From Perkinsela sp. CCAP 1560/9 (lineage: Eukaryota > Protista > Euglenozoa: Kinetoplastea): DNA of 64,000 bases. Below the pieces are notes generated by a model. That model worked only from the letters and a program-made list of their open reading frames with translations, searched no databases and was not told the DNA's origin. The stretch is from the NCBI GenBank assembly GCA_965644495.1, contig CBFFSA010000001.1:1922001-1986000 (forward strand), given 5' to 3'. The position numbers and the translations under genes are program-made. Below, piece after piece: positions 1,387-62,826 of this stretch; within the stretch, counting starts at the first letter, position 1; each line of letters starts with the position of its first letter.

Positions 1387-1505
1387 AAGACGAGATCTCT
1401 CCAATGCTGCAAAGATTAGCAAAAACGGATAAAAAAACCAAAATTCCGAGGGGGGGGGGCAAGATCAACTGAAACCACTGTACGTGATCAACTGAAACCA
1501 CTGTA
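1387..1505. mobile_element. Solo terminus of a Tc1/mariner-like element (TIR reads CAGTGGTTTCAGTTGATC inward), terminal 20 nt tandemly duplicated
   Basis: Matches 16560-16659; gatcaactgaaaccactgta at 1463-1482 and 1486-1505; ends in TA. Confidence 0.6.
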
Positions 1506-1585
1506 TGCGTTTGCATTACTTTTTTCTCCGGTTAAATTTTTTTCCATACCTAGTCACTAGAGCTTCTTCATCTAACAGCCCTACG

Positions 1586-2449
1586 ATGTTCCCCTCAGCT
1601 GTATCCCGCGTTGATTTGGCTGACGCACCGCAACCCTCCCCGAAGCGCCGAAAACGAAATGATCACGACTCTCGTCTCAGCGCTGAAATACATGCCGCGG
1701 ATGGTCCAGTTGCCCGCCCCGGTAAAGTGCGAGGTGCAAATTTACCGCAGGAATATGAACTTATGCGACTGATCGCCGGACTTCAGCATCCGCATGCAGC
1801 GTGGAACACATCCACTCCCGCCTGTGAGTGGCCTGGCGTGATGTGCAAAGAGCAAACCATCATCCAGATTGACTGGGGTCATCGCAGCCTTTTTGGATCA
1901 ATGCAGTGGGAATGCCTCCCAAAGAGTTTGGAGAAAATGAAAGCCAACAGTGCTCGTCTGAATGGAACCCTCCCGCTGGACATGATGCCTCCGAATCTCG
2001 TCCTTCTTTACTTGTTCACAAACGAGCTCAGCGGGGAGCTTGATCTGCGACACCTCCCCACCAGTATGCGAAAACTGTGCGTAGGGGACAATAAATTTGA
2101 AGGGGAGGTAGATTTGACACAACTTCCGCCCAACTTCGCGGTGCTGACGCTCCAAATGAACGAACTGTCCGGGGAGATATGTCTCAGTGAGTTTCCCCAA
2201 ACCCTTCGTATTTTGTATATAGGAAACAATGAATTTACGGGGGCGCTGGATCTTTCTCACCTCCCTCCGTTATTGGAAGAGCTTGATGCGCAATACACGG
2301 AGTTTGAGGGAACAGTCTTACTGGACTCTCTTCCCAAAAGCTTAGATACACTTAATCTTGATGGGTGTGCAGTCTGTGGTGAAATCAAAGAGGAGAATGC
2401 ACCCTCTAATTTGAGCATAGACGGTACTGATATCACTGTTTTGGAATAG
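1586..2449 (+). CDS. LRR protein, subfamily A, with NLS-like PKRRKRN in the leader (ORF open from 1505)
   Basis: RPGKVRGANLPQEYEL leader, WNTSTPACEWPGVMC cap, about 7 LRRs of 23 aa; ATG 1586 follows a pyrimidine tract and AG. Confidence 0.9.
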   Translation: MFPSAVSRVDLADAPQPSPKRRKRNDHDSRLSAEIHAADGPVARPGKVRGANLPQEYELMRLIAGLQHPHAAWNTSTPACEWPGVMCKEQTIIQIDWGHRSLFGSMQWECLPKSLEKMKANSARLNGTLPLDMMPPNLVLLYLFTNELSGELDLRHLPTSMRKLCVGDNKFEGEVDLTQLPPNFAVLTLQMNELSGEICLSEFPQTLRILYIGNNEFTGALDLSHLPPLLEELDAQYTEFEGTVLLDSLPKSLDTLNLDGCAVCGEIKEENAPSNLSIDGTDITVLE

Positions 2450-2936
2450 TCCTATTTGGGGATCAGGAAGTTCAAAAGTCCCTCAAAAACCCGCACAGCC
2501 ACATTATAATCTTCTCGGATCCAATTTTGAAAATTCTGATTATAAAAAAATTTACGTCAGCCCTCTTTTCCTTCCTCAGCGCGGAATATACGTGCTTGCA
2601 TCTGTCCCGACAAGAGCACCGAGTTCCGTTAGGTCCTACATAGATAGTATAGCTTCTTTCCGTATTTCCAAGCTCCTGGTATTTTTTTTTCGAAATTCTG
2701 TTTCGTCGCGAAAATGCGTTTGCATGACGTGTCGTGTGATTCCAGACCAGAATTATGTATCCTCAGAAATTGAAATTGAACATTCGGGAAATTGCTTTAC
2801 AGATTTCTTATCGTTTGTATAAATGATTAGACTGCATAAAGTGTCACTGTATCTAATAATGACAGTGGAAAATACGCATATCCAGTAGATTTCAGTAGTG
2901 TAGATTTCACCTTCATTTACGAGCGCGTACTCTTAA

Positions 2937-3770
2937 ATGCTTATGCTAATCGCCATCATATCGGCTTCGGTTTGTCGTGCAGCTGATGACGACGCCAACG
3001 CGGCAGTGCAACACATCCGTCCGGGTAAAATACGAGGAGCCAATTTACCGCAGGAATACGAACTGACACGATTAACTTGCGAGATTGCCAACCCCCCTTC
3101 CTCCTGGAACACATCCACAAAGGCGTCTGATTGGATGGGCGTGAGTTGTGATGAGAATTCGCGTGTGACAAGGATAAACTGGAGCTATATGGATCTCATC
3201 GGCACGCTGCAATGGGATTACCTGTGCAGTACGCTACAAGAATTTCAGGTATGGCAGAACGGTTTCTCTGGAAATGTACCGCTTAATAAATTGCCCGCAG
3301 AAATGACCAAACTAGAGATATCATGCAATGCCTTTTCTGGAGAGTTGGATTTTTCGCATCTTCCCGAAAAAATGGATACAATTATATTAACCCAAAACAA
3401 CTTTGAGGGGTGCGTGGACCTGACCCGTTTGCCTGAAGCTTTGACGTTTTTTAATATCAATGAAAACAACTTTTCCCGGTCTGTGTGCTTGAGTAACTTG
3501 CCTAGCAACCTGAGACTCCTGGGACTTGCAAGGAACCATTTTACGGGACCCCTTGACCTCCAACATTTGCCTCCCTCTCTCCAAGTGTTTGAGGGCCATG
3601 GAAATCTATTCAGTGGTATTGTGCTCCTCGACTGTCTTCCGGAAGGACTGCGTAAGCTTACTTTGGAAGAAAATACGAAACTGGTCGGCGAAATTGATAA
3701 AGACGTTATTCCCACATCTTTGCGACATATTCGTGTGGACGGTACACAAATATCTACCAACATTGAATAA
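2937..3770 (+). CDS. LRR protein, subfamily A, hydrophobic N-terminus
   Basis: RPGKIRGANLPQEYEL; 7 LRRs of 23 aa, e.g. LPAEMTKLEISCNAFSGELDFSH. Confidence 0.92.
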   Translation: MLMLIAIISASVCRAADDDANAAVQHIRPGKIRGANLPQEYELTRLTCEIANPPSSWNTSTKASDWMGVSCDENSRVTRINWSYMDLIGTLQWDYLCSTLQEFQVWQNGFSGNVPLNKLPAEMTKLEISCNAFSGELDFSHLPEKMDTIILTQNNFEGCVDLTRLPEALTFFNINENNFSRSVCLSNLPSNLRLLGLARNHFTGPLDLQHLPPSLQVFEGHGNLFSGIVLLDCLPEGLRKLTLEENTKLVGEIDKDVIPTSLRHIRVDGTQISTNIE

Positions 3771-4578
3771 ATAGATTTCCTTCTACACGTATGTGTACAA
3801 AATGTCGCAACATTCAAAGTCGACCGTTTTTAGACTACCTGTTTCGCATCGTGGCGTTCGACAGTCAGCTTTTTTTGATCAGCTTTTTTCGCCTAGGTAA
3901 GTACCTGTACCTTATTTTCAGTTGATAAAATTTATCAATGATTTATTATATCATTCTATCGTCCTTATTTTTGCTTTTCTTTGAGTAAAGAGTATTGGGC
4001 TTTGCGCTATATTATGTATCCCGCTATGTTATGGTATAGAAGGCCCTCCCGTAGGCTCTCCGTACGTATCCCCCCAATAAGGGAGTGGTTTTAGGTCAAA
4101 TCTCTCTTACTTATGCTTTTCTCCCCAACTTGTTTGACAACTTTTCCTTATTCTTTTCTCTCAAAACGTGTTAAAAAGCTTATTTCGGTACCCCCGAGGC
4201 CCCATAAAACTTCGTTCCTTCTTCCCGATAAGATTCCGTTTCTCCTCGAAAATGAATTTTATCTTTTCGCATACGGTTGGCGGCTTCCACTGTGCTTCCT
4301 CAGGCGCGGGGACCTACTCCTTGCTATGACTGATCGAGGGCTCACCAAAGGCATCGGACCCGGCCGCCCTTCTATACGCTGAAGAACATGCATTCGCAAC
4401 GGCCGGAGAGCTCTCATGCTGATGCACGACCAAGTGTAACACCGACAGCAACAAATGTCATTCTAATAGAATGACAATAATAGAATCTATTCTTTCTTTC
4501 GACAGAGAGGTGACTTTCGGTTACATTCAAGAATATTTAGCCTTTTCACCTTTTCCGCAATTTTACATTTCTCACGCT

Positions 4579-5370
4579 ATGGATCTTCCGGACCGCAGAA
4601 TCACAGAGAAACGTCCCAGTAAAGTACGAGGAGCCCAATTACCTCAAGAATACGAACTCTCACAATTTATTCAACACATACACAAGACGAAGACCACATG
4701 GAATACATCCAATCCCGCATGTGAGTGGGAAGGCGTTACGTGTGATGAAGAGTTAAATGTCATGGAGGTGAATTGGGGCTTTATGTTTCTTTCCGGATCC
4801 CCTTCTTGGGGGGATCTGTGCCGCACAGTACGTAATTTTTCTGTGTGGGAAAACGGACTTACTGGAGGGGTATCATTTAGTGAGCTGCCTCCAGGACTGA
4901 GCTATCTGCAGCTCTCGACCAATGCTTTTTCGGGAGAATTGGATCTGACTCATTTGCCGGCCCGCCTGGAGTCACTTTTGCTGAAAGATAATAAGTTTGA
5001 AGGAAATGTTGATCTAACCCATTTGCCCTCCACCTTGAGAAAGCTCTGTATGAGCGAGAACCAAATTTCCGGGAAAGTAAATCTTACCGGGCTGCCGAGA
5101 AAATTGAGCGATTTATCTTTTCCGGATAACAAACTAACGGGACCTCTGGACTTAGAGCATTTGCCTCCCTCGCTCGTACATCTGGATTGTGAAAATAATA
5201 ACTTTACTGGCGTTGCCAAGTTTGATCGTCTTCCTCGAAGTTTCGAAATACTTCGGGTTACGAACAACCCTATGCTGTCCGGATATGTTGAAACGTCAAA
5301 GTTGCCAAAGACGTTGAAATGTATTTGGGTTGGAAATACTCGCATAACTTCAAACATAAAACGTGCGTAA
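4579..5370 (+). CDS. LRR protein, subfamily A (ORF open from 4471; start uncertain)
   Basis: RPSKVRGAQLPQEYEL, ACEWEGVTC cap, 7 LRRs. Confidence 0.9.
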   Translation: MDLPDRRITEKRPSKVRGAQLPQEYELSQFIQHIHKTKTTWNTSNPACEWEGVTCDEELNVMEVNWGFMFLSGSPSWGDLCRTVRNFSVWENGLTGGVSFSELPPGLSYLQLSTNAFSGELDLTHLPARLESLLLKDNKFEGNVDLTHLPSTLRKLCMSENQISGKVNLTGLPRKLSDLSFPDNKLTGPLDLEHLPPSLVHLDCENNNFTGVAKFDRLPRSFEILRVTNNPMLSGYVETSKLPKTLKCIWVGNTRITSNIKRA

Positions 5371-7277: not shown

Positions 7278-7301
7278 GAGGAATAAAGAAAAAAACAATT
7301 A

Positions 7302-8379: not shown

Positions 8380-8814
8380 TTAATGCACTTCATGATGTTC
8401 ACGAAGCGACTCTCTCGAGACTGTTCGCTGCCATCGTGGGTATCCCCATACTTTACGCTCCGCAGTGCGATGTTTCGCTGCAACCAACGTTGTCGCCCCA
8501 AAATTATAGTGTTGGAGTCGTACCCAACACTTAATAGTGCTGTGGACACTCTCAGCACCATTAGTACGGTACCCCTTCTCGTTCACAAACTCCCTACTAT
8601 GATTCACGGAGTAGCGGCAACAAACTTGGTCCAAACCATTATAAGCCCCCCAATAGTCGGTCACTACCACGGATCGCGCACTGGCATGATGGGGAATGAT
8701 GAAGCCATGTAAGGTAGGCGTATCACGACGATTCACCAATTTCCAATGGGTCCGCCCCGTTTTGCCAGTATCACGAGGTTCCGTGGCGGTTGATACGTCC
8801 CGATACCTTTTCAT
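8380..8814 (-). pseudogene. Merlin/IS1595-family DDE transposase C-terminal fragment
   Basis: VVTDYWGAY...VNHSREFVNEKGYRTNGAES motif. Confidence 0.85.
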
Positions 8815-9206
8815 GTATTTACTTTTTTTTATAAAGTGGATCAGTGTTCTACTAGGATCTATTCATTTGTCGTTTTTCAAGGTTTGTAAAGAGCACAAAA
8901 ACGTTACAAAACTTAACGGGGCAATTTTTTTGAAAAAATCAAACGTTTTCCGCACTTTTGTCCCTATCACCCTTAGAGGTCAGAGCAAAAAATCGAAAAA
9001 TAATTAAATTTTAATTCGTAATCCAGAAAAGGGTAAAAAGTAGGTGTTCAGTAGGGAGTGCTACGTGCTACAGTATCGTATCCTATGTATTGTAGCTTAC
9101 TGCAGCAAATCAGCTTGTATACTTGCACTTGTTAGCATATTTGTTGAAGCACATTTATTTTGCAGTTGCAACGGAGATACGACTTAGAGATATATCAGTT
9201 TTACCC

Positions 9207-10055
9207 ATGCGTGTGGCGCTTTTTGCAGATTCTTCTCGGAAACCACAAAAAGCAACGCGTTCGCTCTTACCTCAAGAAGTTCAGCTCTCTGCGTTTGTGT
9301 CGAACTTTTCCAAAACACATAAGACGTGGAACGCTCACGTACAAGCATGTGAGTGGAGTGGGGTAACGTGCGATACGCATAAAAGGGTCGTTACTGTGTC
9401 CTGGTGCGGGCGTGCCCTCCGTGGCGACCCTTCCTGGTGCCATTTACCCGACAGCATTCATACGTTAGAGCTGGGGAGACTTAATTATGGTTGCGGAAAT
9501 CAACTCTCGGGACCGATTCCCACCGCCTTGTTTCCCCATCCCTCTGTACGGATTGCTCTGGACTATAATGTGCTATGCGGGAAAGTTGAGCTTCACGACC
9601 TTCCCGTGAATCTGCAAAGTTTTGACATAAGTGGGAATGCTTTGGAAGGAGAGCTTGCGTTAGAGCAGCTGCCAACGTCCATTAGTATGTTTAACGCCGC
9701 AAACGCGGGATTCAGTGGCGGGATCTCATTATCATTGATGCCGGCAAATATTAAAAAGTTGGTTATTTCTCTCAACCGATTAAGTGGTGAAGTGGATCTT
9801 CACGATCTCCCCACGAGCTTAGCTGAGCTCTACCTGCATAAAAATAATTTCTCGGGGGCGGTCGATCTTAGCCGCCTTCCCTCTAATTTGGAGCGGTTGA
9901 CAATTGACACGAATCATTTTTCTGGAGTCCTTGATCTGTCTAGCCTCCCAAAGAATCTAAAGTATTTGAATTATGCCGAGAACAAGTTCGATCATGTAAT
10001 TGTAAACGATGATAAGGAACATCATTTTAAAACGGGTTTGGTAACGACAAAGTGA
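9207..10055 (+). CDS. LRR protein, divergent member with 8 LRRs
   Basis: MRVALFADSSRKPQKATRSLLPQE leader, ACEWSGVTC cap; first ATG at 9207. Confidence 0.9.
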   Translation: MRVALFADSSRKPQKATRSLLPQEVQLSAFVSNFSKTHKTWNAHVQACEWSGVTCDTHKRVVTVSWCGRALRGDPSWCHLPDSIHTLELGRLNYGCGNQLSGPIPTALFPHPSVRIALDYNVLCGKVELHDLPVNLQSFDISGNALEGELALEQLPTSISMFNAANAGFSGGISLSLMPANIKKLVISLNRLSGEVDLHDLPTSLAELYLHKNNFSGAVDLSRLPSNLERLTIDTNHFSGVLDLSSLPKNLKYLNYAENKFDHVIVNDDKEHHFKTGLVTTK

Positions 10056-13877: not shown

Positions 13878-14567
13878 ATGGTTCATCCTTTCAATACGAT
13901 GCGTGCAATTTTACTTACGAATGCAGATATTTTATCTCGACCAAGTAAAGTGCGAGGCGCTGTCTTACCACAGGAATACACATTGTCTCGCTTTGTGAGT
14001 AATCTTGCGTCCCTAGAGGAATCGTGGACAGAGGCTACTCCCGCATGTGAGTGGCGATATGTGTTGTGTAATGCGGAAAAGCAAGTAACTTCACTGGGCT
14101 GGGATAATAAACTGTTTGAAGATGAGACAGATGAAGGTGGTTCGGAATTTCCCATTTTGGATGGTCCACTACTGTGGGAGTACATCCCGCATACGCTAAT
14201 TCTCTTTACAGCATACGTGCAGGACTTATCAGGCCCTGTGCCGCTTTCCGTACTACCCAATTGTTTAACAAAGTTTAACATTCGTACCAATGAATGCAGT
14301 GGGCAATTAGATCTGATACATCTACCCTCTGCATTGGAAATCTTGGATTTACGTAACAATCAATTTGAAGGGACAATTGATCTCACGCGTCTTCCTGCGC
14401 ATCTAAAATGTCTCTATCTGGGAGGCAACAATCTGTCTGGTAGCTTGGACTTGACACACGTCTCCGAAAATGTGCAGAATATAAATCTGGAACATAACTT
14501 CTTTAACGTTCAGCGGACTGTGCCCAACAATGTAGAATTTGGAACTCAAGCTCTCCCTGGACGTTGA
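13878..14567 (+). CDS. LRR protein, subfamily C-like, 5 LRRs
   Basis: ADILSRPSKVRGAVLPQEY; acidic insert after the cap. Confidence 0.9.
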   Translation: MVHPFNTMRAILLTNADILSRPSKVRGAVLPQEYTLSRFVSNLASLEESWTEATPACEWRYVLCNAEKQVTSLGWDNKLFEDETDEGGSEFPILDGPLLWEYIPHTLILFTAYVQDLSGPVPLSVLPNCLTKFNIRTNECSGQLDLIHLPSALEILDLRNNQFEGTIDLTRLPAHLKCLYLGGNNLSGSLDLTHVSENVQNINLEHNFFNVQRTVPNNVEFGTQALPGR

Positions 14568-14829: not shown

Positions 14830-15453
14830 ATGTGTATGTATATTCCCTCACGTCTATCCCCCCAGGTTCATATTAAAACCTGTGACACTCCAACCGCTAC
14901 AAAGGAAGCGCCCCCGAAGAAGGTACGGGGTACTTCTCTTCCGGTGGAATATGACTTTGAAAAATTCATACAAAACGTCGAGCGTCCAGATGCTTCGTGG
15001 CACACGCACACGCCCGCGGCTGAGTGGGCAGGTATATTCTTTGCGCAAGGAACGTATGATATCGATTGGGCAGACTATGGCTTGCGCGGCTCATTATGCT
15101 GGGAATATTTGGCTACACTTCCCATAAACAGTGTTGTCGTCCCGGAGAACGAGCTCACTGGTCATCTTCCTTTGGAGAATTTACCATCCAAACTCACACG
15201 GTTTCATGTTCATTGCAACGCGCTTAGTGGTCCAGTGGAGCTCCGCTTCTTGCCTTGTGGGCTACGGGTTCTGCGACTCGATTACAATCAGTTTAGTGGA
15301 GAGGTACACTTTGACGCTCTCCCCGCAAGCCTTCAAGAGTTAGGCTTACAGTGGAATACGGCACTCGTTGGAGAGTTAGATCACAATATGTTGAGTGAAA
15401 GGCATCACGTGTTGTCTCTACGTCTCAACCAGACAGGAATTAAAGAGAATTAA
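14830..15453 (+). CDS. Short LRR protein, 4 LRRs
   Basis: PKKVRGTSLPVEY leader, WHTHTPAAEWAGI cap lacking the cysteines. Confidence 0.88.
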   Translation: MCMYIPSRLSPQVHIKTCDTPTATKEAPPKKVRGTSLPVEYDFEKFIQNVERPDASWHTHTPAAEWAGIFFAQGTYDIDWADYGLRGSLCWEYLATLPINSVVVPENELTGHLPLENLPSKLTRFHVHCNALSGPVELRFLPCGLRVLRLDYNQFSGEVHFDALPASLQELGLQWNTALVGELDHNMLSERHHVLSLRLNQTGIKEN

Positions 15454-45320: not shown

Positions 45321-45387
45321 GCTCTTCGTTAAACGCGGTGGTAGTTTTCAAAGCGAAGAGCGCAGCATGAGTGACTTCTAAGTTGAA
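45321..45387. repeat. Palindromic hairpin repeat, partial copy 4
   Basis: gctcttcgttaaacgcggtggtagttttcaa...gcagcatgagtgacttctaagttgaa. Confidence 0.75.
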
Positions 45388-47567: not shown

Positions 47568-47625
47568 AAGGTCTTCTTAGAACAGTGTTCCTGTATTTAT
47601 AATCTACATACTATACAGGGTATAT

Positions 47626-50600: not shown

Positions 50601-51555
50601 TTGGACTAGGAAGACATCTCAGGATATGCTCCGGAGGAGCGTGCGGGCGTGATTCTTCGTATGACTTAACGAACTTTAAAAGAGCCTCCGTAGATAACTT
50701 AGATTTCGCACCCAGACACGGTAATGTTTTCTCGGTAAAGCATCCGTACCTTTATTTAAGGCAGTTAGCTGCGGATTAGAGAGTTCCTTTTCTTTCAGAG
50801 ACTTGCAAGTGGTATTCTTATGAGTGTAATAAGTTTGCTTACAGCGACCGTGAAAAACAGCGCCGCAAGCTCGACACACAACGTAGCATCTCTGGTTAGC
50901 GGCATCTTTTAAAAAGGATGCAGATCCCTAACGATGATCCGTTTCCTTAAAGCACAATTTCGAAGAAGTACTGTTAGTATTCTTGAAATCACACAAGACG
51001 TAATAAAAATAACAGGATAAATCTCCAAATTTAAGCGGGTCCTCAACGTTCCCAGACTGAACTTTCTTCGTATTGTTTGAAATATCAGTGACCTTTCTCA
51101 TTGTGGTCAAGCTTAATTGGCTTGGTCCATCAGCCACCCGCTGATTAACAGCATCGCGCAGTTCGTTGTTAATACGACGTGCTGCTCGCTTCCGAGACCT
51201 TGGAGTAATATCTGCCTCTTCCGGTCATATCAGGATAGTAACTTGATTAATGAGCAGTTTAAAGTAACTAACAGTTATGACTTTGATTAAAAGTATACGA
51301 GCGTGGGAAAAAGTATGGGGAATAGTAAAAAGTTGGATAAAAGGTACGAACGCCCTTACGTAGGTCCCAGAGGCACAATAACATTGTATTTTGCACCACA
51401 AGAAAGCAGAAGCTCTGTATTAGTAGCGAAAAAAGCCCCCTGTATCACTTAGAACACAATTAGATAGGATAACGTAAGACTTTTTAGAAGTCACTCTGTA
51501 GACTAAAATATGTGGTAATAGGAGGTAATAGGAGGTAATTACCGTCCAGGGTATG
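47626..51555 (-). mobile_element. hAT transposon, decayed; transposase about 48809-51130 in several frames
   Basis: TIRs cataccctggacggtaat / attaccgtccagggtatg; BED-like CRACG...H; AVDG; CFGHILNL; ATRW; WWE...FP...YLWVPP...CDSLLS dimerization domain. Confidence 0.85.
48325..48645 (+). pseudogene. Possible Merlin-type N-terminal zinc-ribbon fragment inside the hAT element
   Basis: EWMKNHGLL....C....C....WIC.....C. Confidence 0.4.
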
Positions 51556-51604
51556 ATATATACCCAAATATAATCTACATACACCCAAATTGTATATAAA
51601 AATA

Positions 51605-51905
51605 CCGTATACCCCCCCAGTAACAGAGATTTGGCCATTTTTGGGCTGACCCCCAGTAACAGAGATTTGGCTCGGGAGGGTGGTTGGAGGGGGGAGGGGG
51701 TGTTTGAGCGGGTGGGGGTCGCTGGGCTGGGTGAGGGTGGTTGCGCGGCAGCGATTGGCGTAGTTGCGGGGATGTCTGGCCAGAAAATCAACGCACCCAT
51801 GAACAAAAAAGGTCTTTTCCCACCAAAAAAGCATACCCCCCTAGTAACAGAGATTCGGCCATTTTGGCCCAAAACCCATTCTATTACTCGGGGGGGGGTA
51901 TACGG
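51605..51905. mobile_element. MITE, CCGTA-TIR family
   Basis: TA|ccgtataccccccagtaa ... gggggggtatacgg|TA. Confidence 0.85.
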
Positions 51906-52025
51906 TACCCAAACTGTATATACCCAAATTATCACGGCCAAGCTTAAGGTTCATCTAATAACAATCCTTAGTTGTTCTCTTTTTTTCCCTTTATGTCAAT
52001 GCAATATCGATAAAGCGCATCCTCC

Positions 52026-52772
52026 CTAACGGTACAGTTGCGCACCACCACGAATGCGCATCACATCACTTCGGAGGATTCGGAACACAAAACACAGAGA
52101 AAGAAAATAGAAACTGTGCGAGGCGGTCTTGTCGATCACAGGAATTACACTTGTTGCTTTCCGATTCGGAAGGGGGGAGATACAGAAGTCCGTAATTTTC
52201 TTTTTACCATCGATTTCCTCAATCCTGCACACATTTTCACTCCATTGGACGCCGCCACGTCTTGCACGATGTCCTCTTTCATACTTTCGCTTTGACACGG
52301 CGACTTCATCGGCCTGGACATCGCGCCAGTTTTCGGGAAGTGACATGCCCAGCCAAGCGACGAAGGCGATTCCATAATCCAAAGTTTGAGTGAGGCGTGT
52401 AATAGTCTTTGGGTCAGCACCTGCTTCTTCACATATCGCTTTGCGCGTGGTCCCTCGATGCATCGCAATCAAGGTGAAAATCAGTTACTTAAAAGTAACG
52501 GATGATCGTTGACCTCGCCCAGATGGTATGTACGGGCATTCGAAAGGAAGTCTTTTCTTACACCGAGAAAGGCATAGGAAGCACTTGCGTCCCCCTTCCT
52601 TCATTAAAGCCATGATATGATTTTTACATTTCGAGCAAAGTGGTGATACATACGTTGGACCGTGTCAACGGGCCCACTTGTTTATTATTGCATCTTTCAC
52701 TTTTCCTAACTCCATGACCTTTAGACCATTAACGCAATCAAACGTTTCGCATCCATCACAATCAAAGTTCAT
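52026..52772 (-). pseudogene. Merlin/IS1595-family transposase N-terminal half
   Basis: VQADEVAVSKRKYERGHR...VQW motif; upstream Cys-rich region. Confidence 0.8.
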
Positions 52773-53028
52773 TCAGTTTTATTGCTTAGCAAGGGAAAAA
52801 TAATTATGGAAAAGTCTGTAGAACACTGTAGAACATATTACTACCACAAAAAACATTTTACAATTTTTTTTTGGGGGGGGAAAAAAAGTCCCTTTTCACC
52901 AACGTTTTTTTGGAATCAGTTTCTATACCTTCGAAACCTGGTTCTTCTTCAGGTTGAACTGCCTCCGCAAGAGACATGCATCGACCAAAGAAAGGTCTTG
53001 CGGCTCATCTTCTAGAAGTGTGAGTATA

Positions 53029-53661
53029 CAGGGGTTGGCACTTGCACCTGGGGGGGTCTAAAATTTGTAAACACTGTCCAATTTTGGAAGCTAATAGCGC
53101 ATTCGAGAGCTCTCTCAGAGTTACATGTCTTACAAAAATGTCTTACAAAAAACTATTAGCACACGGGGTAGAAATTCAAATCGTCAGATGGCTCCCAAAC
53201 GAGATTTGTCATTTACATTTTATTCAATTTACCTTAAAAAAAGCTTGCCTTTTCTCTGGACAACGATGGAACAACGCTTTCGAAAGCTACGAAGCGTGCT
53301 TTGGCGATCTGTGTTTTGCTCGTTTTCGTTGGCCACCACAACCGGGTATACCCTTTCTCTTGGGCTTTGGCACGTGCCTTGTTATGAACAGGGGCGTTGT
53401 CCATCGCTACATACGCGCGGTGCCTCCGCAAGTACTGAAACTCGCTTTCGTGGCATAAAAAGGGGGGAAAAAGAAAAATTGCCGAATTTTCACATCAAAA
53501 AAAATAATATTTTTTATCATCGGATTAAATCGTTTAATTTGAGCGATCCGAATAAGCCAAAGACATACAATTCTGAGAGAGCTCTCCAAAGCGCTATTGT
53601 TTTACAAAATTGAGCAAATTTTACAAATTTTAGACCCCCCAGGTTTGAGTGCCACCCCCTG
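53029..53661 (-). mobile_element. Internally deleted Tc1/IS630-like element (CAGGGG TIR family)
   Basis: TA|caggggttggcac...ggggggtctaaaatttgtaa and the inverted copy at the other end |TA; retains AMDNAPVH...WWP. Confidence 0.85.
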
Positions 53662-53740
53662 TATGTATGTCTATGTGTGAGTATATCTACTTGTATGTCT
53701 GATTCTAGAAATTCGGTGACAGGATCTAATAAGATTTACT

Positions 53741-54001
53741 TCATCGCCGGGTTCTGTATGAAGAACAATACCCCAGATTAATGACTTCTATTCCACACGC
53801 AAGTTTGAAGCCCATGGGTAAGACCCGAGGCCGTAAAACCCGGCTCCCTATTCGTACGCAGCACGCGTTACCAAGTGCTGCAGATACGGGAATTTGATAA
53901 TAATAATTTCGCACATCGGCGTGTAGGAAATATGTCTGTGTTTGTGAACAGTCGCCTAAGGAAACTAGTGCCCGAATTATAGTTACAAACCGGTGACACA
54001 C
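53741..54001 (-). pseudogene. Reverse transcriptase fragment, DIRS-like
   Basis: ADVRNYYYQIPV ... RVLPMGF match RT motifs A and B. Confidence 0.65.
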
Positions 54002-55131
54002 TTTTTAACGCAATTTAATGTACGTTTTTTTAATTAACGTACTACCTAGTAGCATTAATTAACGTAATACAGTTACCCCCCTTACTTCGCCTCCCCCCTT
54101 ACTTCACCACAGTTAGTCACTGGACGTGTGGTGAAGTAAGGGGGATGTCAGATTTTTCCCCAGGCAACTTACCACCTCTTTACACAGCCGGAAGGGTGCA
54201 CTGCAACCGACCGTTACATCGGGGTAAGGCGAGGCAGAGCCCACGCCCAGTGGTCTTCAAAGGAGGGACACAGATGGCGCACAAAGATCGATGCACAAAG
54301 GTTCTTGGTGCAACTTTTTTGGTGAAGACGACGCTGTCATACCGGGATTTTAAACCACAGTCCGGTTTAACGTTCCGAGGGGGGATGTTAACGGCTACAG
54401 GAACTGCTAATGCTACTTTGCTGCAGGAATAATAACTTTTGAAGATTGTCTTGGGTTCATCGACGCAACGGGTTGGTAGCAGCACGTTGTTGCCGCCTTG
54501 TACTAACGAAATCGGTAGAGGACTTCGGCCTCGAAACTTCCAAATCTACATGTACATGTGAAGAGTCTGGCCTGCCAGTGACCGATCGGAGTAACCCGGA
54601 ATGATTTAGATTTGTTGAACGATTTCTAATTCAGAACGATTTTCTTCTATGTGAGTTTCATCATCGCTTTGATCATAAAGTTGCGCCACAGCGTCTTGTA
54701 GTTCTTAAATTGGTGTTCAATAGGTTATGTTCTGCGATATCATTTGAATTTTACGATGTAGGAAATTTTCATGGGGAGAAGGTTCAAAACGCATGGGACA
54801 TCGTAGACAAGTTAAAAGAAACATAAAAGATAGAATGCAACACGAGGTATTACAACACTCAAGAAAAGGAAAATATGCTCAATGTCGATAGCATAGTGTA
54901 CTTCAATAATTTGCGGATTTCCGAGAGAACCATAAATTGATCGAACTTTGAATCACTTATTCACCCCCCTTAGAGGGCTGAAACCACCTGGGTTTGCCTA
55001 GGTTTGCCTGGGTTTGCTAATTTTCAATATTGTATTAGGCAACTCATTTTCTTCCTTGGCGAAAAGCACAGTATATTCTTTAATGCTCTTTTCGCACAAT
55101 AACTTATTTTTCTTAGATTCACCCAAAAAAA

Positions 55132-55302
55132 AATATTATTCATGATCTTTTGGCGGTTTTTCTTTTTTAGGCTTTTCGTTAAACGCGAAGGCAGTTTTAA
55201 ACACGAAGCGCGCAGCATGAGTGACTTCTAAGTTGAAAACAACCACCGCATTTAACGAAGAGCCTAAAAAAGAAGAATCGCCAAAAGATCATGAATAATA
55301 TT
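55132..55302. repeat. Palindromic hairpin repeat, extended 170-bp copy 5
   Basis: aatattattcatgatcttttggcg...cgccaaaagatcatgaataatatt around the conserved core. Confidence 0.88.
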
Positions 55303-55512
55303 ACTGTGACCTTTTACAGCGGAAAAACATCAAACCCCCACTTTATACTTCGTTACTGTTCAAAATGGGCGAAGTATAAAGGGGGGATCACAGTAATATT
55401 AGTAGTTGATACTGAAAGTAATGCTAATTTCGTATGATTCGAACATTTCTTTAAGCGTACATGTAGAACACTATTACCCTATTGTCGAACCCCCTACATG
55501 GACCCCGAACTA

Positions 55513-55808
55513 CCGTAGACCCCCCCAGTAATAGAATCGATTTTGGGCCAAAATGGCCGAATCCTTGTTACTGGGGGGGTATGCTTTTTGGGTGAGAAAG
55601 GACCTTTTTTATTCATGAGTTCGTTGACTTTCAGCACATCCAACCCCGCAACCACGCCATTCGCTCCCTCGCAACCGCCCTCACCCCGCCCAAACACCCC
55701 CTCCCTCCTGCAACGACCCTCCCGAGCCAAATCTTTGTTACTGGGGGTCAGCCGAAAAAGGGTCGAATCCCTTTTACTGGGGGGGTCTATTACTAGGGGG
55801 CTCTACGG
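55513..55808. mobile_element. MITE, CCGTA-TIR family
   Basis: TA|ccgtagacccccccagtaatag ... ctattactagggggctctacgg|TA. Confidence 0.85.
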
Positions 55809-56422
55809 TAGTCTCCGTACTCGCTCCCTACACACTTCCTGCACCCCCTGTACCCGACTGCACCCCCTAGACCCGACTTCCACCCCCTGGAACCCCCACC
55901 CGGATCCTCCAGCGAACTCCATAGCCGAAAAAACTCCAAGTACCATTGCCATTGGTCTCTCTTGGGACCTGACTGGGTTTGCATTTTACTGGTTTCAGCC
56001 CTCTTACTTCACCACTCCCCTTACTTCACCAAAAAGTACGGGTTTTGGATCAAAAAATGGGGGCTAAGTAGGGGGGATAACGGTAACTCACGTAGAATTA
56101 CGAAATTTGTTGAATTTTACTAAAAGAAAACTAAAATTCGGGCCGCTTCGCGGCGCGTGTATTTCAAGGGAATAAAGATAAAGGGTACCTTGAAGGGGAC
56201 ACTACATATTCCAAGTATAACGTAACATAACCACCACGCGGTGCAGTGTTTTTGACGTGGAATCCCCCCTGACAGGCAGAATACGGCAGATTAAGCGACC
56301 ACCTCCCATCACAGCACTAGTTTTACTCCATTTTTTGGAATTAAAAAGAAAGGAATTGGAATCGTCCATTTCATTTACATTTAGAGAGTAGTACTTTGAA
56401 CTAACACTCGTACTTCAACACA

Positions 56423-57124
56423 ATGCAACGTGCCGTACGCGTGGCCGATGTCCCCTCTCGACCCAGTAAGGTTCGAAACGCGGTTCTCCCACAAGAATAC
56501 AATATGTTTCGACTACTGAGTAACGCCAGTTTCGCTGAGGAGTCATGGACCGAGAAAACGCCCGCTTGTGTGTGGAAGCATGTGGAGTGTAACGATGAGG
56601 GAGAGGTGACAAAGATACAATGGCGCAAATACGAAAGCGCATATGGAGACAAAGAGGAGAGAGTCTCTCTACAAGGTTCACTGCGATGGAATTTCCTACC
56701 CGACACTCTGATCTCCTTCGATGTTTCCTTGCAGGAGGTTTTGGAGGGGCACGTAGACTTGGCGGTACTACCGGCAAGATTGAAAAAGTTTGACATTGGT
56801 AGCAATCAGTTTAGCGGAAGCTTGGATTTAACGCATTTGCCGTCTACTCTGAAAGATTTGCGTTTGGGATGGAATCGTTTTGAAGGTGAAGTTGATCTTA
56901 CACGCCTCCCCGATACTTTGAAAAATCTCGACCTGTGTCATAATAGTCTGTGCGGAAAACCTGATCTCACAAAGCTTCCGAAGGCGCTAATGTGGGCCAG
57001 GCTCCTTGTCAACAATTTCGTCATACCTGACTTTATTCCGGAAGGTGTACACATCAAGCCGTATGTGAGTAGAAGACGACCCTGTGGATTCAATCCGTAC
57101 AAAGTACGATATAACCATAAATGA
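56423..57124 (+). CDS. LRR protein, subfamily C, 5 LRRs
   Basis: ADVPSRPSKVRNAVLPQEY; close paralog of 62134. Confidence 0.92.
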   Translation: MQRAVRVADVPSRPSKVRNAVLPQEYNMFRLLSNASFAEESWTEKTPACVWKHVECNDEGEVTKIQWRKYESAYGDKEERVSLQGSLRWNFLPDTLISFDVSLQEVLEGHVDLAVLPARLKKFDIGSNQFSGSLDLTHLPSTLKDLRLGWNRFEGEVDLTRLPDTLKNLDLCHNSLCGKPDLTKLPKALMWARLLVNNFVIPDFIPEGVHIKPYVSRRRPCGFNPYKVRYNHK

Positions 57125-59579: not shown

Positions 59580-60404
59580 ATGTACGGCAACTACTGCATC
59601 GATGACGGATCCGACGATTTACGTCGAGGCAAAGTTACCTCTCTGCTACTGCCCCAAGAGGGTATGCTGGAACGTTTTATTTCAAACTTAACTGGAAAAC
59701 ATAAATCCTGGCGTACGACGAAGAAGAATATGTTTGGACGTGTCAAACGTCTATCCGCATGCAATTGGAAAGGCGTGACATGTGATGAGCATCAACACGT
59801 GACTCATATTATATGGGATTCAATGAATCTATTGGGCACCTTGCAGGGGAATTTTTTGCCGTGTACGTTGTCTTATTGTGACCTTCTCAATAACAGACTG
59901 GGAGGATCGCTTCAACTTCACACGTTGCCATCACAGCTTAGATACTTAAGATTGGCCGTGAACACTTTTATCGGTGAGTTAAACTTGACTCAGTTACCGA
60001 ACAGATTGCGTTCCCTTTGGTTGAGTGACAACCAATTTGAAGGAAATGTTGATCTCACGAATCTGTGTTCTGGATTACAATACTTAAATCTTCGAGGGAA
60101 TAAACTTTCTGGTGCCGTCGAACTTTCTCATTTGCCAAAAAAATTAGAATACTTGCAATTGTCGAAGAACAGATTTACAGGACCGCTCTCGCTGCAACAT
60201 TTACCTCCATCGCTTTCTACCTTTAGCGCGCATGGCAACTCTTTCTCTGGTTTAGTGAAGTTTGACCGTCTTCCTCCAAGCTTGGTACATCTCTCTCTGC
60301 ACCACAACGCGGAACTTTATGGCGAAATTGACAAGTCAGTTCTTCCTAAGCTTTTACAGCCTATTGAATTCTGGAATACAAACATTAAATTCGGTACAAA
60401 GTGA
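59580..60404 (+). CDS. LRR protein, subfamily B
   Basis: IDDGSDDLRRGKVTSLLLPQE; KKNMFGRVKR; close paralog of 18004. Confidence 0.92.
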   Translation: MYGNYCIDDGSDDLRRGKVTSLLLPQEGMLERFISNLTGKHKSWRTTKKNMFGRVKRLSACNWKGVTCDEHQHVTHIIWDSMNLLGTLQGNFLPCTLSYCDLLNNRLGGSLQLHTLPSQLRYLRLAVNTFIGELNLTQLPNRLRSLWLSDNQFEGNVDLTNLCSGLQYLNLRGNKLSGAVELSHLPKKLEYLQLSKNRFTGPLSLQHLPPSLSTFSAHGNSFSGLVKFDRLPPSLVHLSLHHNAELYGEIDKSVLPKLLQPIEFWNTNIKFGTK

Positions 60405-60527
60405 GTATAACGAAACGTTTATGATATTGATGAATGAAAACAGATGTGGCATAAATTCGTGTGTGATAGAAAAGTATGTTTGTAACTTATTGGTGACGCG
60501 AGGTTTATCACCGTATTCCTTCTTATA

Positions 60528-61861
60528 CAGGGGTGTAAATTTGTATGTGGTGGGGGTCTAAAATTCGTAAAATTTGGCCAATTGTGGAAAATAATAGCGC
60601 ATTCGAGAGCTCTCGAACAGGGCTCATGAACGCAACATGGTCGCGATAGGCACAAGGGGGTATTGCCCCCTCGACAAAGGGACCCCAAATGCGATTCGCA
60701 ACTTTCTAAAGCACGGGAAAAAATAGAAAAAATAATAATAATTGCAGTTTCCGCCGTTCTTTTCAATCACAATACGGCATCTCTTACGAAAGCTCTTCAT
60801 AGCGTTTTCAAAGGCTATAGAATGTGTCGTTTGAATATCTTGAAACGCTGCTTCGATCGCAATGATCAAATCTGTACGATTTCTAGGGGCCAAGCCATTT
60901 TTGAAATTGTCCATTATGGACCATAAATTTTCAACGGGCATGAGATCAGGTGATTTTGCTGGCCAAGGAAGAACAGTAATTCCTGTCTCTTGAAAGCTTG
61001 TCCTGGCCAGATTGTGCACCGTACAGTTATCCATTGCAATAACGCTAGAACGGTGCCGCTTAAGGTAAGAAATTAACCCTCCACGCTTCTTCATGGCTTC
61101 ATCAAAAATAGCCCCCGTCACTGTACCTCGGTTTCCTTGAGAACGAACAGAAGGAAAAACGTGAAGGTGAAACCCATGCTTAAGGCTCGCTGCCATCCAA
61201 ACCATAACACCATTCCCCCCATGCCATGCATCCAATTCACCTTGCTGCTCCTTGGGAGCGTCAGTTTTGCGGCAGAGGTACGTGATGTGCCCCCCACTCT
61301 TCCCACAGGTAAATTTTTTTTCATCCATCCAAATGATATTGGACAGTTCCGCGTCACTCCACGTTAGCATTTCTTCACAGAAACGTACTCGTTTCTCTTT
61401 ATGCACTGAGGTAAGTGCAGGGGATTTCCGGACTGTGCGCAAGACGATGCCATATGATTTCATGTGGGTCGTCAAAGTTTGACGAGAGCAAGTGAACCCA
61501 AGATTTTCCATTAACCGGTGGAGCTCACTCCAGCTCCTGATGCCATAGGGTTGATCTCGAACACCTTCGTCTATCGCTTTCAAAGCAGCCTCACGTAGTT
61601 CAGGTGTCACAGCGATGTTCGTTGGGGCGTGTTTCTCGTTCTTGGAGTTTACTTCTCCAGTATCAAGATAGCGCTTTAGTTACAGTTCACAGTAGCTCCA
61701 TGAACTTGAAAATTGCGCGCGGTTAGGGAAAAAGACTGTGTTGCTTCGTAATCGGCAACAAGAAGCATGCGCCAGCTTGCTTTTATGTGCCCAGGCGAAG
61801 AATAAGCCCTTTCGGAGTGCTTATGTTCCGGAGATCGTCCAAAATCCCGTCGTTGTGGCAT
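60528..61861 (-). mobile_element. Tc1/IS630-like transposon; DDE ORF 60624-61610, N-terminus disrupted near 61676; only one TIR found
   Basis: WMDEKKF, MDNCTVH, WPAKSPDLMPVENLW; TA|caggggtg TIR at 60528. Confidence 0.9.
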
Positions 61862-62133
61862 GAATAAGGGCAAAAAACACAAAAATTGTGAAAATTGCAG
61901 GATTTCGTTTTCCAAAAAGCTAAGTTTTTTTATGTGCATAAGTCAATGCCTTTTCTTTCGCCAATACCAATTTAGAAGGTTTGTAAAATCGCTCAACTCC
62001 AAAAAAACATTTGAAGTATATTTTTTTGGAAAACAAAGGGGGGAAAAAGGGGGAGATTCCACCGAAATATGAATATATGAACCCGAACAATGGTCTAATA
62101 TGGATTTTAAAGAAATTCTAGTCCTTCACGACA

Positions 62134-62826
62134 ATGAAGAGTTCTGTACAAGCTGCTGATGTCCCATCTCGACCGAGTAAGGTGCGAAACGCGGTCCTGC
62201 CCCAAGAATATAATCTGTTTCGACTACTGAGTAATGCCAGTTTTGAAGAGGAATCATGGAGCGTGAAGACGCCTGCGTGTGAGTGGAAGTTAGTACAGTG
62301 CAACCCCGAGGGACAGGTCACAAACCTCAATTGGCGCAAAGACACAAGTCGGTATGCGAAGGAAGAGGAAAATGTCCGCATAAAAGGTGTACTGCGATGG
62401 GATTTTCTCCCCAATACGCTGCTCTCTTTTTCTGCTTCAAATCAAGCGTTTTTGGAGGGGCACGTAGACTTGTCGGTACTACCCGCGGGATTAAAAAACT
62501 TTGATATTGGTACGAATCGATTCAATGGAGGGTTGGATTTAACGCATTTGCCATCTACTCTGGAAAAACTGGTTTTGAATTTCAATCTATTTGAAGGTGA
62601 AGTTGACCTTACACATCTCCCCGACGGTTTGAGAATTCTCGACCTTGCGTACAATACTCTGCGTGGAGAACCTGATCTCACAAAGCTTCCGGAGTTTCTG
62701 ACGTGGGCCAGACTACTTCACAACAATTTCGTCATACCTGACTTTGTTCCGGCATGTGTTCATATCAAGCCGCATGTGCCAAGGAGTACTCGCCATTGTG
62801 GGTACAGCAGGTATAAGAAGAAGTAA
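62134..62826 (+). CDS. LRR protein, subfamily C, 5 LRRs
   Basis: ADVPSRPSKVRNAVLPQEY; close paralog of 56423. Confidence 0.92.
   Translation: MKSSVQAADVPSRPSKVRNAVLPQEYNLFRLLSNASFEEESWSVKTPACEWKLVQCNPEGQVTNLNWRKDTSRYAKEEENVRIKGVLRWDFLPNTLLSFSASNQAFLEGHVDLSVLPAGLKNFDIGTNRFNGGLDLTHLPSTLEKLVLNFNLFEGEVDLTHLPDGLRILDLAYNTLRGEPDLTKLPEFLTWARLLHNNFVIPDFVPACVHIKPHVPRSTRHCGYSRYKKK

What the first reader, a model, noticed from the sequence alone, without database searches (positions are those of the whole stretch)
1505..62826. Co-oriented array of 20 single-ORF LRR-only genes kept intact among dead transposons: candidate diversified recognition or effector repertoire
Seen: 19 intact ORFs plus 1 relic, all on the + strand, sharing a leader motif, an LRRNT-type cap and 23-aa LRRs, with no TM, kinase or NB domain. 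Nearly every interspersed TE gene is broken while the LRR ORFs are not. Inference: purifying selection on a rapidly duplicating family, possibly an immune-like or host-interaction repertoire in a protist. From memory, not verified, the leader resembles an expanded LRR family annotated in Perkinsela/Paramoeba datasets.
Basis: partly seen in the sequence, partly recalled or inferred. Interest (0 to 1): 0.85.

Follow-up and report, generated by a model that had tools for sequence, protein, structure and literature searches.

The report
Old LRR gene array in Perkinsela-type kinetoplastid
The window holds 19 intact genes and one stump of a roughly 1000-member family of small leucine-rich-repeat binding proteins in a Perkinsela-like kinetoplastid. 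They all point one way because kinetoplastids transcribe long one-directional gene trains, and what the family binds is unknown.

Summary
There are 19 intact + strand ORFs (207-314 aa) and one leader-only relic (42622-42807). All share a conserved leader, a plant-type Cx6C cap (Pfam LRRNT_2) and 23-residue LRRs, with no other domain.

The interpretation needs correcting in three places.
- Co-orientation is not special. All family matches across 264 kb are on the + strand, and housekeeping genes follow on the same strand. One gene is joined to a kinetoplastid spliced leader 13 nt before its ATG, so this is a polycistronic unit.
- The window's copies are old, not rapidly duplicating. Synonymous sites are saturated (median pS 0.79).
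- Not every transposon gene is broken. Two Tc1 frames in the window are open.

Purifying selection is supported: no stops in 5,064 in-frame codons, against 262 and 321 in the off-frames. In young pairs dN/dS is 0.15 at scaffold positions and 0.75 on the concave face. Most members lack a signal peptide, TM segment or GPI signal. About a fifth carry a KRRK motif.

The genome holds roughly 1000 loci. The family is not mentioned in the main text of the 2017 Perkinsela genome paper. This scan had already met it elsewhere in this genome, as a retrotransposon target.

Best reading: a diversified soluble binding-protein repertoire whose ligands are unknown.

The parts
1505..2449 (+). LRR gene, 314 aa. 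It has a long head with a KRRKR motif; an alternative ATG lies at 1586.
   Evidence: (LRRNT_2 21.7 bits)
2937..3770 (+). LRR gene, 277 aa, clade A. It has a signal-peptide-like hydrophobic head of 13 residues, and the first cap Cys is replaced.
4471..5370 (+). LRR gene, 299 aa, clade A. An alternative ATG lies at 4579.
   Evidence: (LRRNT_2 24.5, LRR_4 27.5)
9207..10055 (+). LRR gene, 282 aa from the first ATG. The ORF tool started it at TTG 9123. It sits on a long branch of the tree.
13878..14567 (+). Short LRR gene, 229 aa, clade C.
14830..15453 (+). Short LRR gene, 207 aa. Both cap cysteines are lost.
16891..17697 (+). LRR gene, 268 aa. Contigs of the RNA-like run X5 cover it at 16900-17421 with 0-1 differences.
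18004..18828 (+). LRR gene, 274 aa, clade B (DDGSD head and a basic insertion before the cap).
19632..20462 (+). LRR gene, 276 aa, clade A. This is the member that was folded.
   Evidence: (pLDDT 93)
21489..21490 (+). AG trans-splice acceptor of gene 21504. An X5 contig carries the spliced-leader 3' end up to this point.
21504..22334 (+). LRR gene, 276 aa. It is transcribed and trans-spliced, with a 13-nt 5' UTR; the X5 contig continues about 280 nt past the stop codon. The head is 10 residues before the conserved D, so there is no signal peptide.
22845..23492 (+). Short LRR gene, 215 aa.
26766..27686 (+). LRR gene, 306 aa, clade A. It has an 18-residue hydrophobic head followed by KRRKR.
28058..28882 (+). 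LRR gene, 274 aa, clade B. It sits on a long branch and has a Ser-rich tail.
32066..32878 (+). LRR gene, 270 aa, clade B.
35067..35894 (+). LRR gene, 275 aa, clade A. A copy with one residue changed exists in an ENA assembly (P0002).
41638..42495 (+). LRR gene, 285 aa from the ATG, clade A, with a KRRKR head.
42622..42807 (+). Relic: an open frame that holds only the leader motif of a family member and then stops. The 14-kb repeat-filled gap follows it.
56423..57124 (+). Short LRR gene, 233 aa, clade C. It is the closest paralogue of 62134 (dS 0.70, dN/dS 0.31).
59580..60404 (+). LRR gene, 274 aa, clade B.
62134..62826 (+). Short LRR gene, 230 aa, clade C.
8383..8862 (-). Fragment of a Merlin/IS1595-type transposase (160 aa, profile positions 47-137 of 153).
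   Evidence: Merlin in Perkinsela is reported in PMC8101967
37292..38256 (-). Harbinger-type DDE_Tnp_4 fragment split over two frames.
24976..26136 (-). 386-aa frame of a multicopy gene of unknown family. Relatives elsewhere lie in frames of about 700 aa, so this copy is probably partial.
42808..56422 (.). Gap filled with dispersed repeats that are 81-97% identical to copies elsewhere in the genome. It includes an ~850-bp unit that is also found in tandem arrays.
60624..61610 (-). Tc1/mariner transposase frame of 328 aa (HTH_Tnp_Tc3_2 plus DDE_3) with no stop.
63262..64000 (-). Second Tc1-type DDE_3 frame, open up to the window edge.

Best explanation
The window is a stretch of a very long one-directional (polycistronic) transcription unit of a Perkinsela-type kinetoplastid. 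It is packed with old paralogues of a lineage-specific family of roughly 1000 small soluble LRR-only proteins.

Each protein has four parts:
- a short, disordered head carrying a conserved motif (D, then R-x-G-K-V-R);
- a plant-type N-cap (LPQEY helix, W, Cx6C);
- about three to eight 23-residue repeats of the form LPxxLxxLxLxxNxFxGxVDLxx;
- a short C-cap.

Each gene becomes its own mRNA by spliced-leader trans-splicing. This is shown for one gene and inferred for the rest.

Selection keeps the solenoid scaffold and lets the concave beta-face change. The family therefore most likely works as a repertoire of binding modules with many different ligands (inferred).

Most members have no signal peptide, TM segment or GPI signal, so they most likely act as soluble proteins inside the kinetoplastid cell. 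A subset with a KRRK motif probably acts in a nucleus (inferred). The ligands are unknown.
For: Architecture and fold:
- Pfam finds LRRNT_2 and LRR only.
- The unit is 23 residues, with N13 in 89% and G17 in 93% of units.
- The AF2 model has pLDDT 93, with residues 1-30 disordered.
- Best fold matches are PGIP, a plant ice-binding LRR protein, and the PSKR and FLS2 ectodomains. The PDB profile hit to BRI1 has E 4e-49.

Transcription unit:
- All 86 HMM matches in C1:1722001-1986000 are on the + strand.
- GPI8-like, two OGDH E1 genes and an IP5 2-kinase follow on the + strand.
- An X5 contig carries GTTTCTGTACCTTGTT up to the AG at 21489-90. X5 has no depth on the high-copy intergenic repeats, so it is RNA-derived.
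- That leader end followed by GT occurs 91 times in the genome, against 0 for the control.

Age and selection:
- Median pS is 0.79. The closest pair in the window has dS 0.70 and dN/dS 0.31.
- There are 0 in-frame stops in 5,064 codons.
- Eight independent young pairs give dN/dS of 0.15 (core), 0.75 (concave), 0.48 (convex) and 0.39 (outside the repeats).
- Between-strain differences on orthologous contigs are 6 synonymous to 4 non-synonymous.

Size of the family:
- The first look finds 1444 candidates; all 142 that were scored are strong, and 10 of 150 listed matches carry stops.
- The cap DNA pattern matches 669 times against 106 for the control, and 34 times per ~63 loci in the calibrating region. 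That gives about 1000 loci.

Localisation signals:
- 38 of 51 heads have no hydrophobic region, 4 have one of 10 residues or more, and 11 of 51 have four or more K/R in a row.
Against: - No ligand, localisation or phenotype is known.
- A conserved Cx6C cap pair is typical of extracellular LRR proteins. Some homologues from other organisms, and 4-13 of the 51 members here, have signal-peptide-like heads, so part of the family may be secreted.
- The concave-face dN/dS stays below 1 overall, so relaxed constraint explains it as well as diversifying selection does.
- Expression is shown for only 2 of the 4 genes laid, and from contigs rather than raw reads.
- The copy-number estimate is indirect.
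- The organism's name is coded in the tools, so 'Perkinsela' is inferred.
Confidence: 0.68

Rival explanations
1. Host-directed effector repertoire. The conserved disordered head (hydrophobic stub, D, R-x-G-K-V-R) would be an export or processing signal. The LRR proteins would be delivered into the amoeba's cytoplasm, and the KRRK-bearing ones would go on to the host nucleus that the symbiont sits beside.
For: - A short linear motif is conserved in a disordered segment despite saturated divergence.
- KRRK motifs occur in 11 of 51 members.
- A minority have signal-peptide-like heads, and homologue P0058 has a full hydrophobic segment ending in AD before a basic stretch and the leader.
- Perkinsela lies free in the host cytoplasm, and secretion to the host has been proposed as a hypothesis (PMC5601477).
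- The fast-evolving concave face fits this reading.
Against: - 38 of 51 heads have no hydrophobic region.
- The one head with a mapped 5' end (21504) has only 10 residues before the D, too short for a classical signal peptide.
- No export motif of this kind is known in kinetoplastids.
- KRRK could equally serve import into the symbiont's own nucleus.
Confidence: 0.17
2. Surface or secreted coat family of the Leishmania PSA-2/GP46 or Trichomonas BspA type. It would be displayed on the symbiont's plasma membrane at the interface with the host.
For: - The genes are tandem, same-orientation LRR genes in a kinetoplastid, with a Cx6C N-cap as in PSA (PMC2584048).
- The family size is like TvBspA, which has 911 members (PMC2843621).
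Against: - There is no signal peptide in most members, no C-terminal Cys-rich domain, no Thr/Ser-rich stalk, and no TM or GPI signal.
- The repeat is 23 residues with a conserved Asn, not the 24-25-residue PSA signature.
- No TpLRR match was found.
Confidence: 0.07
3. Intracellular immune-like sensors. In a transposon-laden genome, diversified LRRs would bind transposon or viral proteins and pass the signal to separate partners.
For: - The genome is dense in transposons.
- Earlier notes of this scan say that R2-like elements insert into these genes.
- The concave face is variable.
Against: - No signalling domain (NB-ARC, TIR, kinase or death-fold) is fused to any member examined.
- No partner is known.
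- Being an insertion target does not imply a defence role.
Confidence: 0.05
4. Functionless, decaying duplicates that spread neutrally along with segmental duplications.
For: - About 12 broken loci lie among 44 in the 200 kb upstream.
- One relic lies in the window.
Against: - All 19 ORFs are open after synonymous saturation, with P about 2e-7 per gene by chance.
- Core dN/dS is 0.15.
- At least one copy is trans-spliced.
Confidence: 0.03

Closest known systems
Plant-type extracellular LRR proteins with an LRRNT_2 cap (PGIP, LRR-RLP and LRR-RLK ectodomains such as BRI1, FLS2, PSKR)
   Same: - The N-cap helix, W and the CxWxGVxC cap are shared.
- So is the LxxLxLxxNxFxG core, including the second beta-strand after the Gly.
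- The size matches PGIP (about 300 aa).
- Best sequence match is BRI1, E 4e-49. Best fold matches are PGIP 8ikw/1ogq and FLS2 with TM 0.76.
   Different: - The repeat is 23 residues, not 24, and starts with LP.
- Most members have no signal peptide.
- There is no TM segment or kinase.
- The family carries its own conserved disordered head (D ... RxGKVR).
- It is found in a kinetoplastid, in about 1000 copies.
Leishmania promastigote surface antigen PSA-2/GP46 family (PMC2584048)
   Same: - It is a kinetoplastid LRR family in same-orientation tandem clusters.
- It has a Cx6C element before the repeats.
- Repeat number and sequence are variable.
   Different: PSA has a signal peptide, 24-25-residue repeats with the G(T/S)LPxxWxx(M/I) signature, a C-terminal CGC Cys-rich domain, a Thr/Ser-rich region and a GPI anchor. 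None of these is present here. PSA families also have tens of genes, not about a thousand.
Trichomonas vaginalis BspA-like family (911 genes; PMC2843621)
   Same: It is a very large protist family made almost only of LRRs. Most members lack a signal peptide or TM segment, it includes many pseudogenes, and its ligands are unknown.
   Different: Its repeat class is different (TpLRR), it has no LRRNT_2 cap, it occurs in an extracellular parasite, and its genes are dispersed rather than lying in polycistronic units.
Bacterial injected LRR proteins of the YopM type
   Same: These are LRR-only soluble proteins whose repeats begin LPxxLxxL. The profile matches YopM at E 2e-28. YopM acts in the host cytosol and nucleus (own knowledge).
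   Different: The YopM repeat is 20-22 residues and lacks the NxFxG plant-type half and the Cx6C cap. It is delivered by a type III system, which does not exist here.

Membership tests
Plant-type LRR superfamily (Pfam LRRNT_2 + LRR_1/LRR_4/LRR_8) | An N-terminal cap with a conserved W and a CxWxGVxC pair | tested here: met
   LRRNT_2 is above its 20.7-bit gathering score in 7 of 19 window proteins. The two Cys are present in 47 and 50 of 51 members, and W61 in 51 of 51.
Plant-type LRR superfamily (Pfam LRRNT_2 + LRR_1/LRR_4/LRR_8) | Tandem LxxLxLxxNxLxGxIP repeats that form a curved solenoid | tested here: met
   The 23-residue unit has L, N (89%), F/L and G (93%) at the canonical places. The AF2 model has pLDDT 93 and its Foldseek top hits are plant LRR ectodomains. 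The period is 23, not 24.
Plant-type LRR superfamily (Pfam LRRNT_2 + LRR_1/LRR_4/LRR_8) | Entry into the secretory pathway (signal peptide) | tested here: not met
   By a simple hydrophobic-run criterion, 38 of 51 heads have no h-region, 9 are borderline and 4 have 10 residues or more. No dedicated predictor was available.
Leishmania PSA-2/GP46 | A 24-25-residue repeat with the G(T/S)LPxxWxx(M/I)xxLxxLxLxxxx signature | tested here: not met
   The unit is 23 residues, with no W at that place and a conserved Asn. The PSA signature is taken from PMC2584048.
Leishmania PSA-2/GP46 | A signal peptide, a C-terminal CGC Cys-rich domain, and a Thr/Ser region or GPI anchor | tested here: not met
   The consensus C-terminus has no conserved Cys, and there is no hydrophobic C-terminus.
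Leishmania PSA-2/GP46 | Direct sequence homology to PSA proteins | not tested
   No PSA sequence was available by reference, and the database searches returned no named trypanosomatid protein.
BspA-like (TpLRR) proteins | The TpLRR repeat class | tested here: not met
   Pfam hits are to LRR_1, LRR_4, LRR_8 and LRRNT_2 only.
Kinetoplastid polycistronic, trans-spliced genes | Long runs of co-oriented, intron-less genes that include unrelated housekeeping genes | tested here: met
   All 86 family matches over 264 kb are on the + strand. Peptidase_C13 (GPI8-like), two OGDH E1 genes and an IP5 2-kinase lie on the + strand just downstream. All the ORFs are uninterrupted.
Kinetoplastid polycistronic, trans-spliced genes | A spliced leader joined at an AG upstream of the ORF | tested here: met
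   This was shown for gene 21504 only. An X5 contig carries the leader's 3' end up to the AG at 21489-90, and the leader end plus GT occurs 91 times in the genome.
NLR or receptor-kinase immune receptors | A signalling domain (NB-ARC, TIR, kinase) fused to the LRR | tested here: not met
   None is present in any of the 19 proteins.

The most novel reading that the evidence does not exclude
The conserved disordered head would be a new kind of export or processing signal. The ~1000 LRR proteins would then be a repertoire that a eukaryotic endosymbiont delivers into its eukaryotic host, with the KRRK-bearing members entering the host nucleus next to which the symbiont always lies. That would be an effector arsenal in a eukaryote-in-eukaryote symbiosis.
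Probability: 0.15. Interest if true: 0.85.

Novelty: new member of a known kind. Interest (0 to 1): 0.55.

Why it matters
Perkinsela is described as a reduced endosymbiont with about 5,250 genes in 9.5 Mb (PMC5601477). The assembly here is 21 Mb, and roughly 1000 loci of one LRR family would make up about 4% of its DNA and a large share of its genes. I found no description of this family in the searchable literature.

A selectively maintained repertoire of that size, with a variable binding face, is the most obvious candidate for whatever mediates contact between the kinetoplastid and its amoeba host, or for something the cell does internally on a large scale. It is also the landing site of the retrotransposons that this scan reported elsewhere in the genome.

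The report also corrects a trap. In kinetoplastids, co-orientation of a gene array says nothing about function.

Tried and rejected
- PTS2-like reading of the K-V-x5 stretch in the leader: the spacing does not fit the consensus, so I rejected it (by eye).
- Classical signal peptide, TM segment and GPI signal: hydrophobicity scans are negative for most members.
- More relics in the window: the HMM with --max and tblastn on the masked window found only 42622-42807.
- Pfam on 20 open frames from the gaps: only one hit, an IS1595/Merlin fragment. Most repeat-encoded frames remain unnamed.
- Literature: Perkinsela with LRR or leucine-rich repeat returned 2 irrelevant papers. The leader string occurs in no paper. 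The main text of Tanifuji 2017 contains no 'leucine'.
- Word-based homologue searches returned only ENA and MMETSP proteins and then plant kinases. Several ENA hits turned out to be the same organism (P0002 and P0005 are near-identical to loci here), so they are not independent relatives.
- The differences at 22094-22124 come from a paralogous contig, so I left them out of the strain comparison.
- The careful tree did not finish in time, so only the quick tree is used.
- The organism's name could not be confirmed because run and organism names are coded.

Full report
**What is there.** The ORF listing shows 19 + strand ORFs of 207-314 aa spread from 1505 to 62826. Two of them were started by the tool at TTG; their first ATGs are at 9207 and 41638. 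Every ORF has an in-frame stop 3-81 nt upstream of its first ATG, so the heads cannot be longer than read. An HMM built from the 19 finds exactly these 19 in the six-frame translation of the window, and nothing on the - strand. At loose thresholds, and by tblastn on the masked window, one more piece appears at 42622-42807. It is an open frame that encodes only the family's leader motif and then stops, 127 nt after gene 41638-42495 and at the edge of a 14-kb repeat-filled gap. The genes cover 24% of the window.

**The protein.** Pfam finds only LRR families. LRRNT_2 is above its gathering score in 7 of 19, alongside LRR_1, LRR_4, LRR_8 and weak FNIP; no kinase, NB-ARC or TIR domain appears. On 247 repeat units from 47 family members (the 19 here plus 28 from the 200 kb upstream), the unit is 23 residues, LPxxLxxLxLxxNxFxGxVDLxx. 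Asn is present in 89% of units and Gly in 93%, and the spacing is 23 in 168 of about 200 intervals. Before the repeats lies a cap with LPQEY-x-L-x-x-F, an almost invariant W, and C-x-W-x-G-V-x-C. AlphaFold with the 47-sequence alignment gives pLDDT 93 for a curved solenoid from residue ~31 onward, while residues 1-30 are of low confidence. Foldseek's best matches are PGIP, a plant ice-binding LRR protein, and the PSKR, SRF6 and FLS2 ectodomains. A profile search of PDB sequences puts BRI1 first (E 4e-49), with YopM further down (E 2e-28). So this is a plant-type LRR-only protein of PGIP size.

**The head.** In the disordered head two things are conserved across 51 members. One is an acidic residue (D in 42, E in 6) about 10 residues after the Met. 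The other is R-x-G/S-K-V-R just before the cap helix. Only 4 of 51 heads have a hydrophobic run of 10 or more residues, 9 are borderline and 38 have none. In the window, 2937 and 26766 are the signal-peptide-like ones. Eleven of 51 carry four or more consecutive K/R, usually P-x-KRRK; in the window these are 1505, 26766 and 41638. There is no TM-like segment beyond two such heads, and no hydrophobic C-terminus. Some long homologues from other, unnamed organisms do start with clear signal peptides. An extracellular ancestry is therefore plausible, but most members here cannot enter the ER by a classical signal.

**Why they all point one way.** I fetched the 200 kb upstream of the window. In the resulting 264 kb (C1:1722001-1986000) all 86 HMM matches are on the + strand. 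They make up 51 full-length ORFs and 21 fragments from about 12 broken loci. Directly downstream of the window, still on the + strand, lie a Peptidase_C13 (GPI8-like) gene, two 2-oxoglutarate dehydrogenase E1 genes and an inositol-pentakisphosphate 2-kinase.

Of the public runs that hold this DNA, one from 2015 (X5) covers genes but has zero depth on intergenic repeats that reach 25,000x in the DNA runs, so it is RNA-derived. One of its contigs matches 21490 to about 22616 with 2 differences. It begins with 16 letters that are not in the genome, GTTTCTGTACCTTGTT, which abut the AG at 21489-90, 13 nt before the ATG of gene 21504. That string has the TTTCTGTAC core of kinetoplastid spliced leaders (own knowledge). 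Followed by GT, it occurs 91 times in the genome against 0 for the reversed control. X5 contigs also cover gene 16891. Two of the four genes laid are thus seen as RNA, and contigs cannot show absence.

Co-orientation is therefore the normal consequence of kinetoplastid polycistronic transcription and carries no functional message. The Atlas's nearest clusters are labelled Euglenozoa (433 and 75 members) and Discosea (61 and 54 members). This fits a Perkinsela symbiont sequenced together with its Paramoeba host. Names are coded in the run tools, so the identification is inferred.

**Age and selection.** Among the 19 window genes the median synonymous difference is 0.79 per site, which is saturated. 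Only one pair, 56423/62134, has dS below 1 (0.70, dN/dS 0.31). The quick tree places the 19 in at least three old clades plus six singletons, interleaved along the chromosome, with median terminal branches of 0.53 changes per site. Younger duplicates (dS 0.15-0.73, dN/dS 0.23-0.60) exist in the upstream 200 kb, and several are neighbours. The window's array is therefore ancient, not rapidly duplicating.

After that much divergence the 19 ORFs have 0 stops in 5,064 codons, while their off-frames have 262 and 321. This gives about 2e-7 per gene for staying open by chance. In eight independent young pairs I split codons by position in the repeat. dN/dS is 0.15 at scaffold positions, 0.75 at the five exposed positions of the LxxLxLxxN strand, 0.48 on the convex side and 0.39 outside the repeats. 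In two pairs concave pN reaches or exceeds pS. This is the pattern of LRR recognition families, but since the class stays below 1 overall it does not prove positive selection. Orthologous DNA contigs of another strain differ at 6 synonymous and 4 non-synonymous coding sites in three genes. The numbers are small but do not contradict constraint.

**Size and spread of the family.** A profile search of the organism's own 21.0-Mb, 110-contig assembly gave 1444 first-look candidates. All 142 that were scored were strong, and 10 of the 150 listed matches contained stops. A degenerate DNA pattern for W-x-G-V-x-C matches 669 times against 106 for the reversed control. In the 264-kb region it matches 34 times for ~63 loci, which scales to roughly 1000 loci, or about 4% of the genome (the scaling is my inference).

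In public protein data, phmmer with one member finds 267 clusters (at 50% identity) below 1e-30. Of the top 142, 87 are 330 aa or shorter. Word-based searches return only ENA-assembly and one MMETSP transcript protein before dropping to plant receptor kinases. No named trypanosomatid protein appeared. At least two ENA hits are the same organism, so they are not independent. The main text of the 2017 Perkinsela genome paper has no mention of leucine-rich repeats, and it reports 9.5 Mb and 5,252 genes (PMC5601477). A later paper cites a more contiguous Perkinsela assembly (PMC11613528). Literature searches for Perkinsela with LRR found nothing relevant.

**The transposons.** The gaps are built of dispersed repeats that are 81-97% identical to copies elsewhere in the genome. 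They include a ~415-bp element with hundreds of copies between genes 19632 and 21504. Recognisable transposase pieces are:
- an IS1595/Merlin fragment at 8383-8862 (Merlin in Perkinsela is reported in PMC8101967);
- a Harbinger DDE fragment split over two frames at 37292-38256;
- a probably partial copy of a ~700-aa multicopy gene at 24976-26136.

The Tc1 frame at 60624-61610 is open over 328 aa with both HTH and DDE domains, and a second one runs open to the window's end. Genome-wide, 97 of 123 Tc1 matches carry a stop inside the match, against 10 of 150 for the LRR family.

**Reading.**
- Shown: the architecture, the fold class, the directional unit, one trans-spliced mRNA, old age, scaffold constraint with a fast concave face, and the lack of classical sorting signals in most members.
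- Inferred: that the family is a repertoire of binding modules with many ligands, acting mostly as soluble proteins inside the kinetoplastid, with a KRRK subset in a nucleus.
- Not excluded: export to the host through the conserved head, which would make this an effector arsenal.

Compared with known families, this one works like PGIP-type or other LRR-only binders and resembles the Trichomonas BspA expansion in scale. It fails the defining features of Leishmania PSA (repeat signature, signal peptide, C-terminal Cys domain, GPI anchor) and of NLR or receptor-kinase receptors.

Noticed in passing
window 20752-21166 (between genes 19632 and 21504): A ~415-bp dispersed non-coding repeat with hundreds of copies (922 first-look candidates, 83-92% identity). 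DNA runs reach 19,000-25,000x depth here against a ~100x baseline.
   Followed up: partly
window, all gaps between LRR genes: Non-LRR open frames of 150 aa or more lie mostly on the - strand (17 against 6), and so does every recognisable transposase piece. That is antisense to the transcription unit.
   Followed up: no
window 44537-45387, and G000:C8:132306-136153, C14:1-4793: An ~850-bp repeat that is single here but stands in head-to-tail arrays elsewhere in the genome (81-88% identity).
   Followed up: no
G000, Tc1 matches (e.g. C6:87477-88442, C9:5217-6182, C35:712-1677): Many Tc1 copies at ~59% identity to the window's copy show the same pattern: exactly 2 TAA inside the match, yet a 411-aa open frame is reported. 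I cannot explain this. It may come from how the tool counts stops, or it may be a shared feature of that subfamily.
   Followed up: no
G000:C1 cap-pattern matches: Cap-pattern matches are on the - strand from about 348 kb to 640 kb, and on the + strand from about 849 kb to 2,190 kb of contig C1. This suggests a strand-switch region between them and a + unit of more than 1 Mb.
   Followed up: no
P0055, P0057, P0062, P0064: There are very long proteins (983-3306 aa) from unnamed sources with clear signal peptides, 23-residue LP-type LRRs and, in P0064, ten internal CxWxGVxC caps. A wider, apparently secreted class therefore shares this repeat type.
   Followed up: no
window 24976-26136 (-): A 386-aa frame of a multicopy gene with no Pfam match. 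Relatives lie in frames of 705-723 aa elsewhere (C11:140501, C1:3353128, C50:37717). It is probably an unnamed transposon protein.
   Followed up: partly
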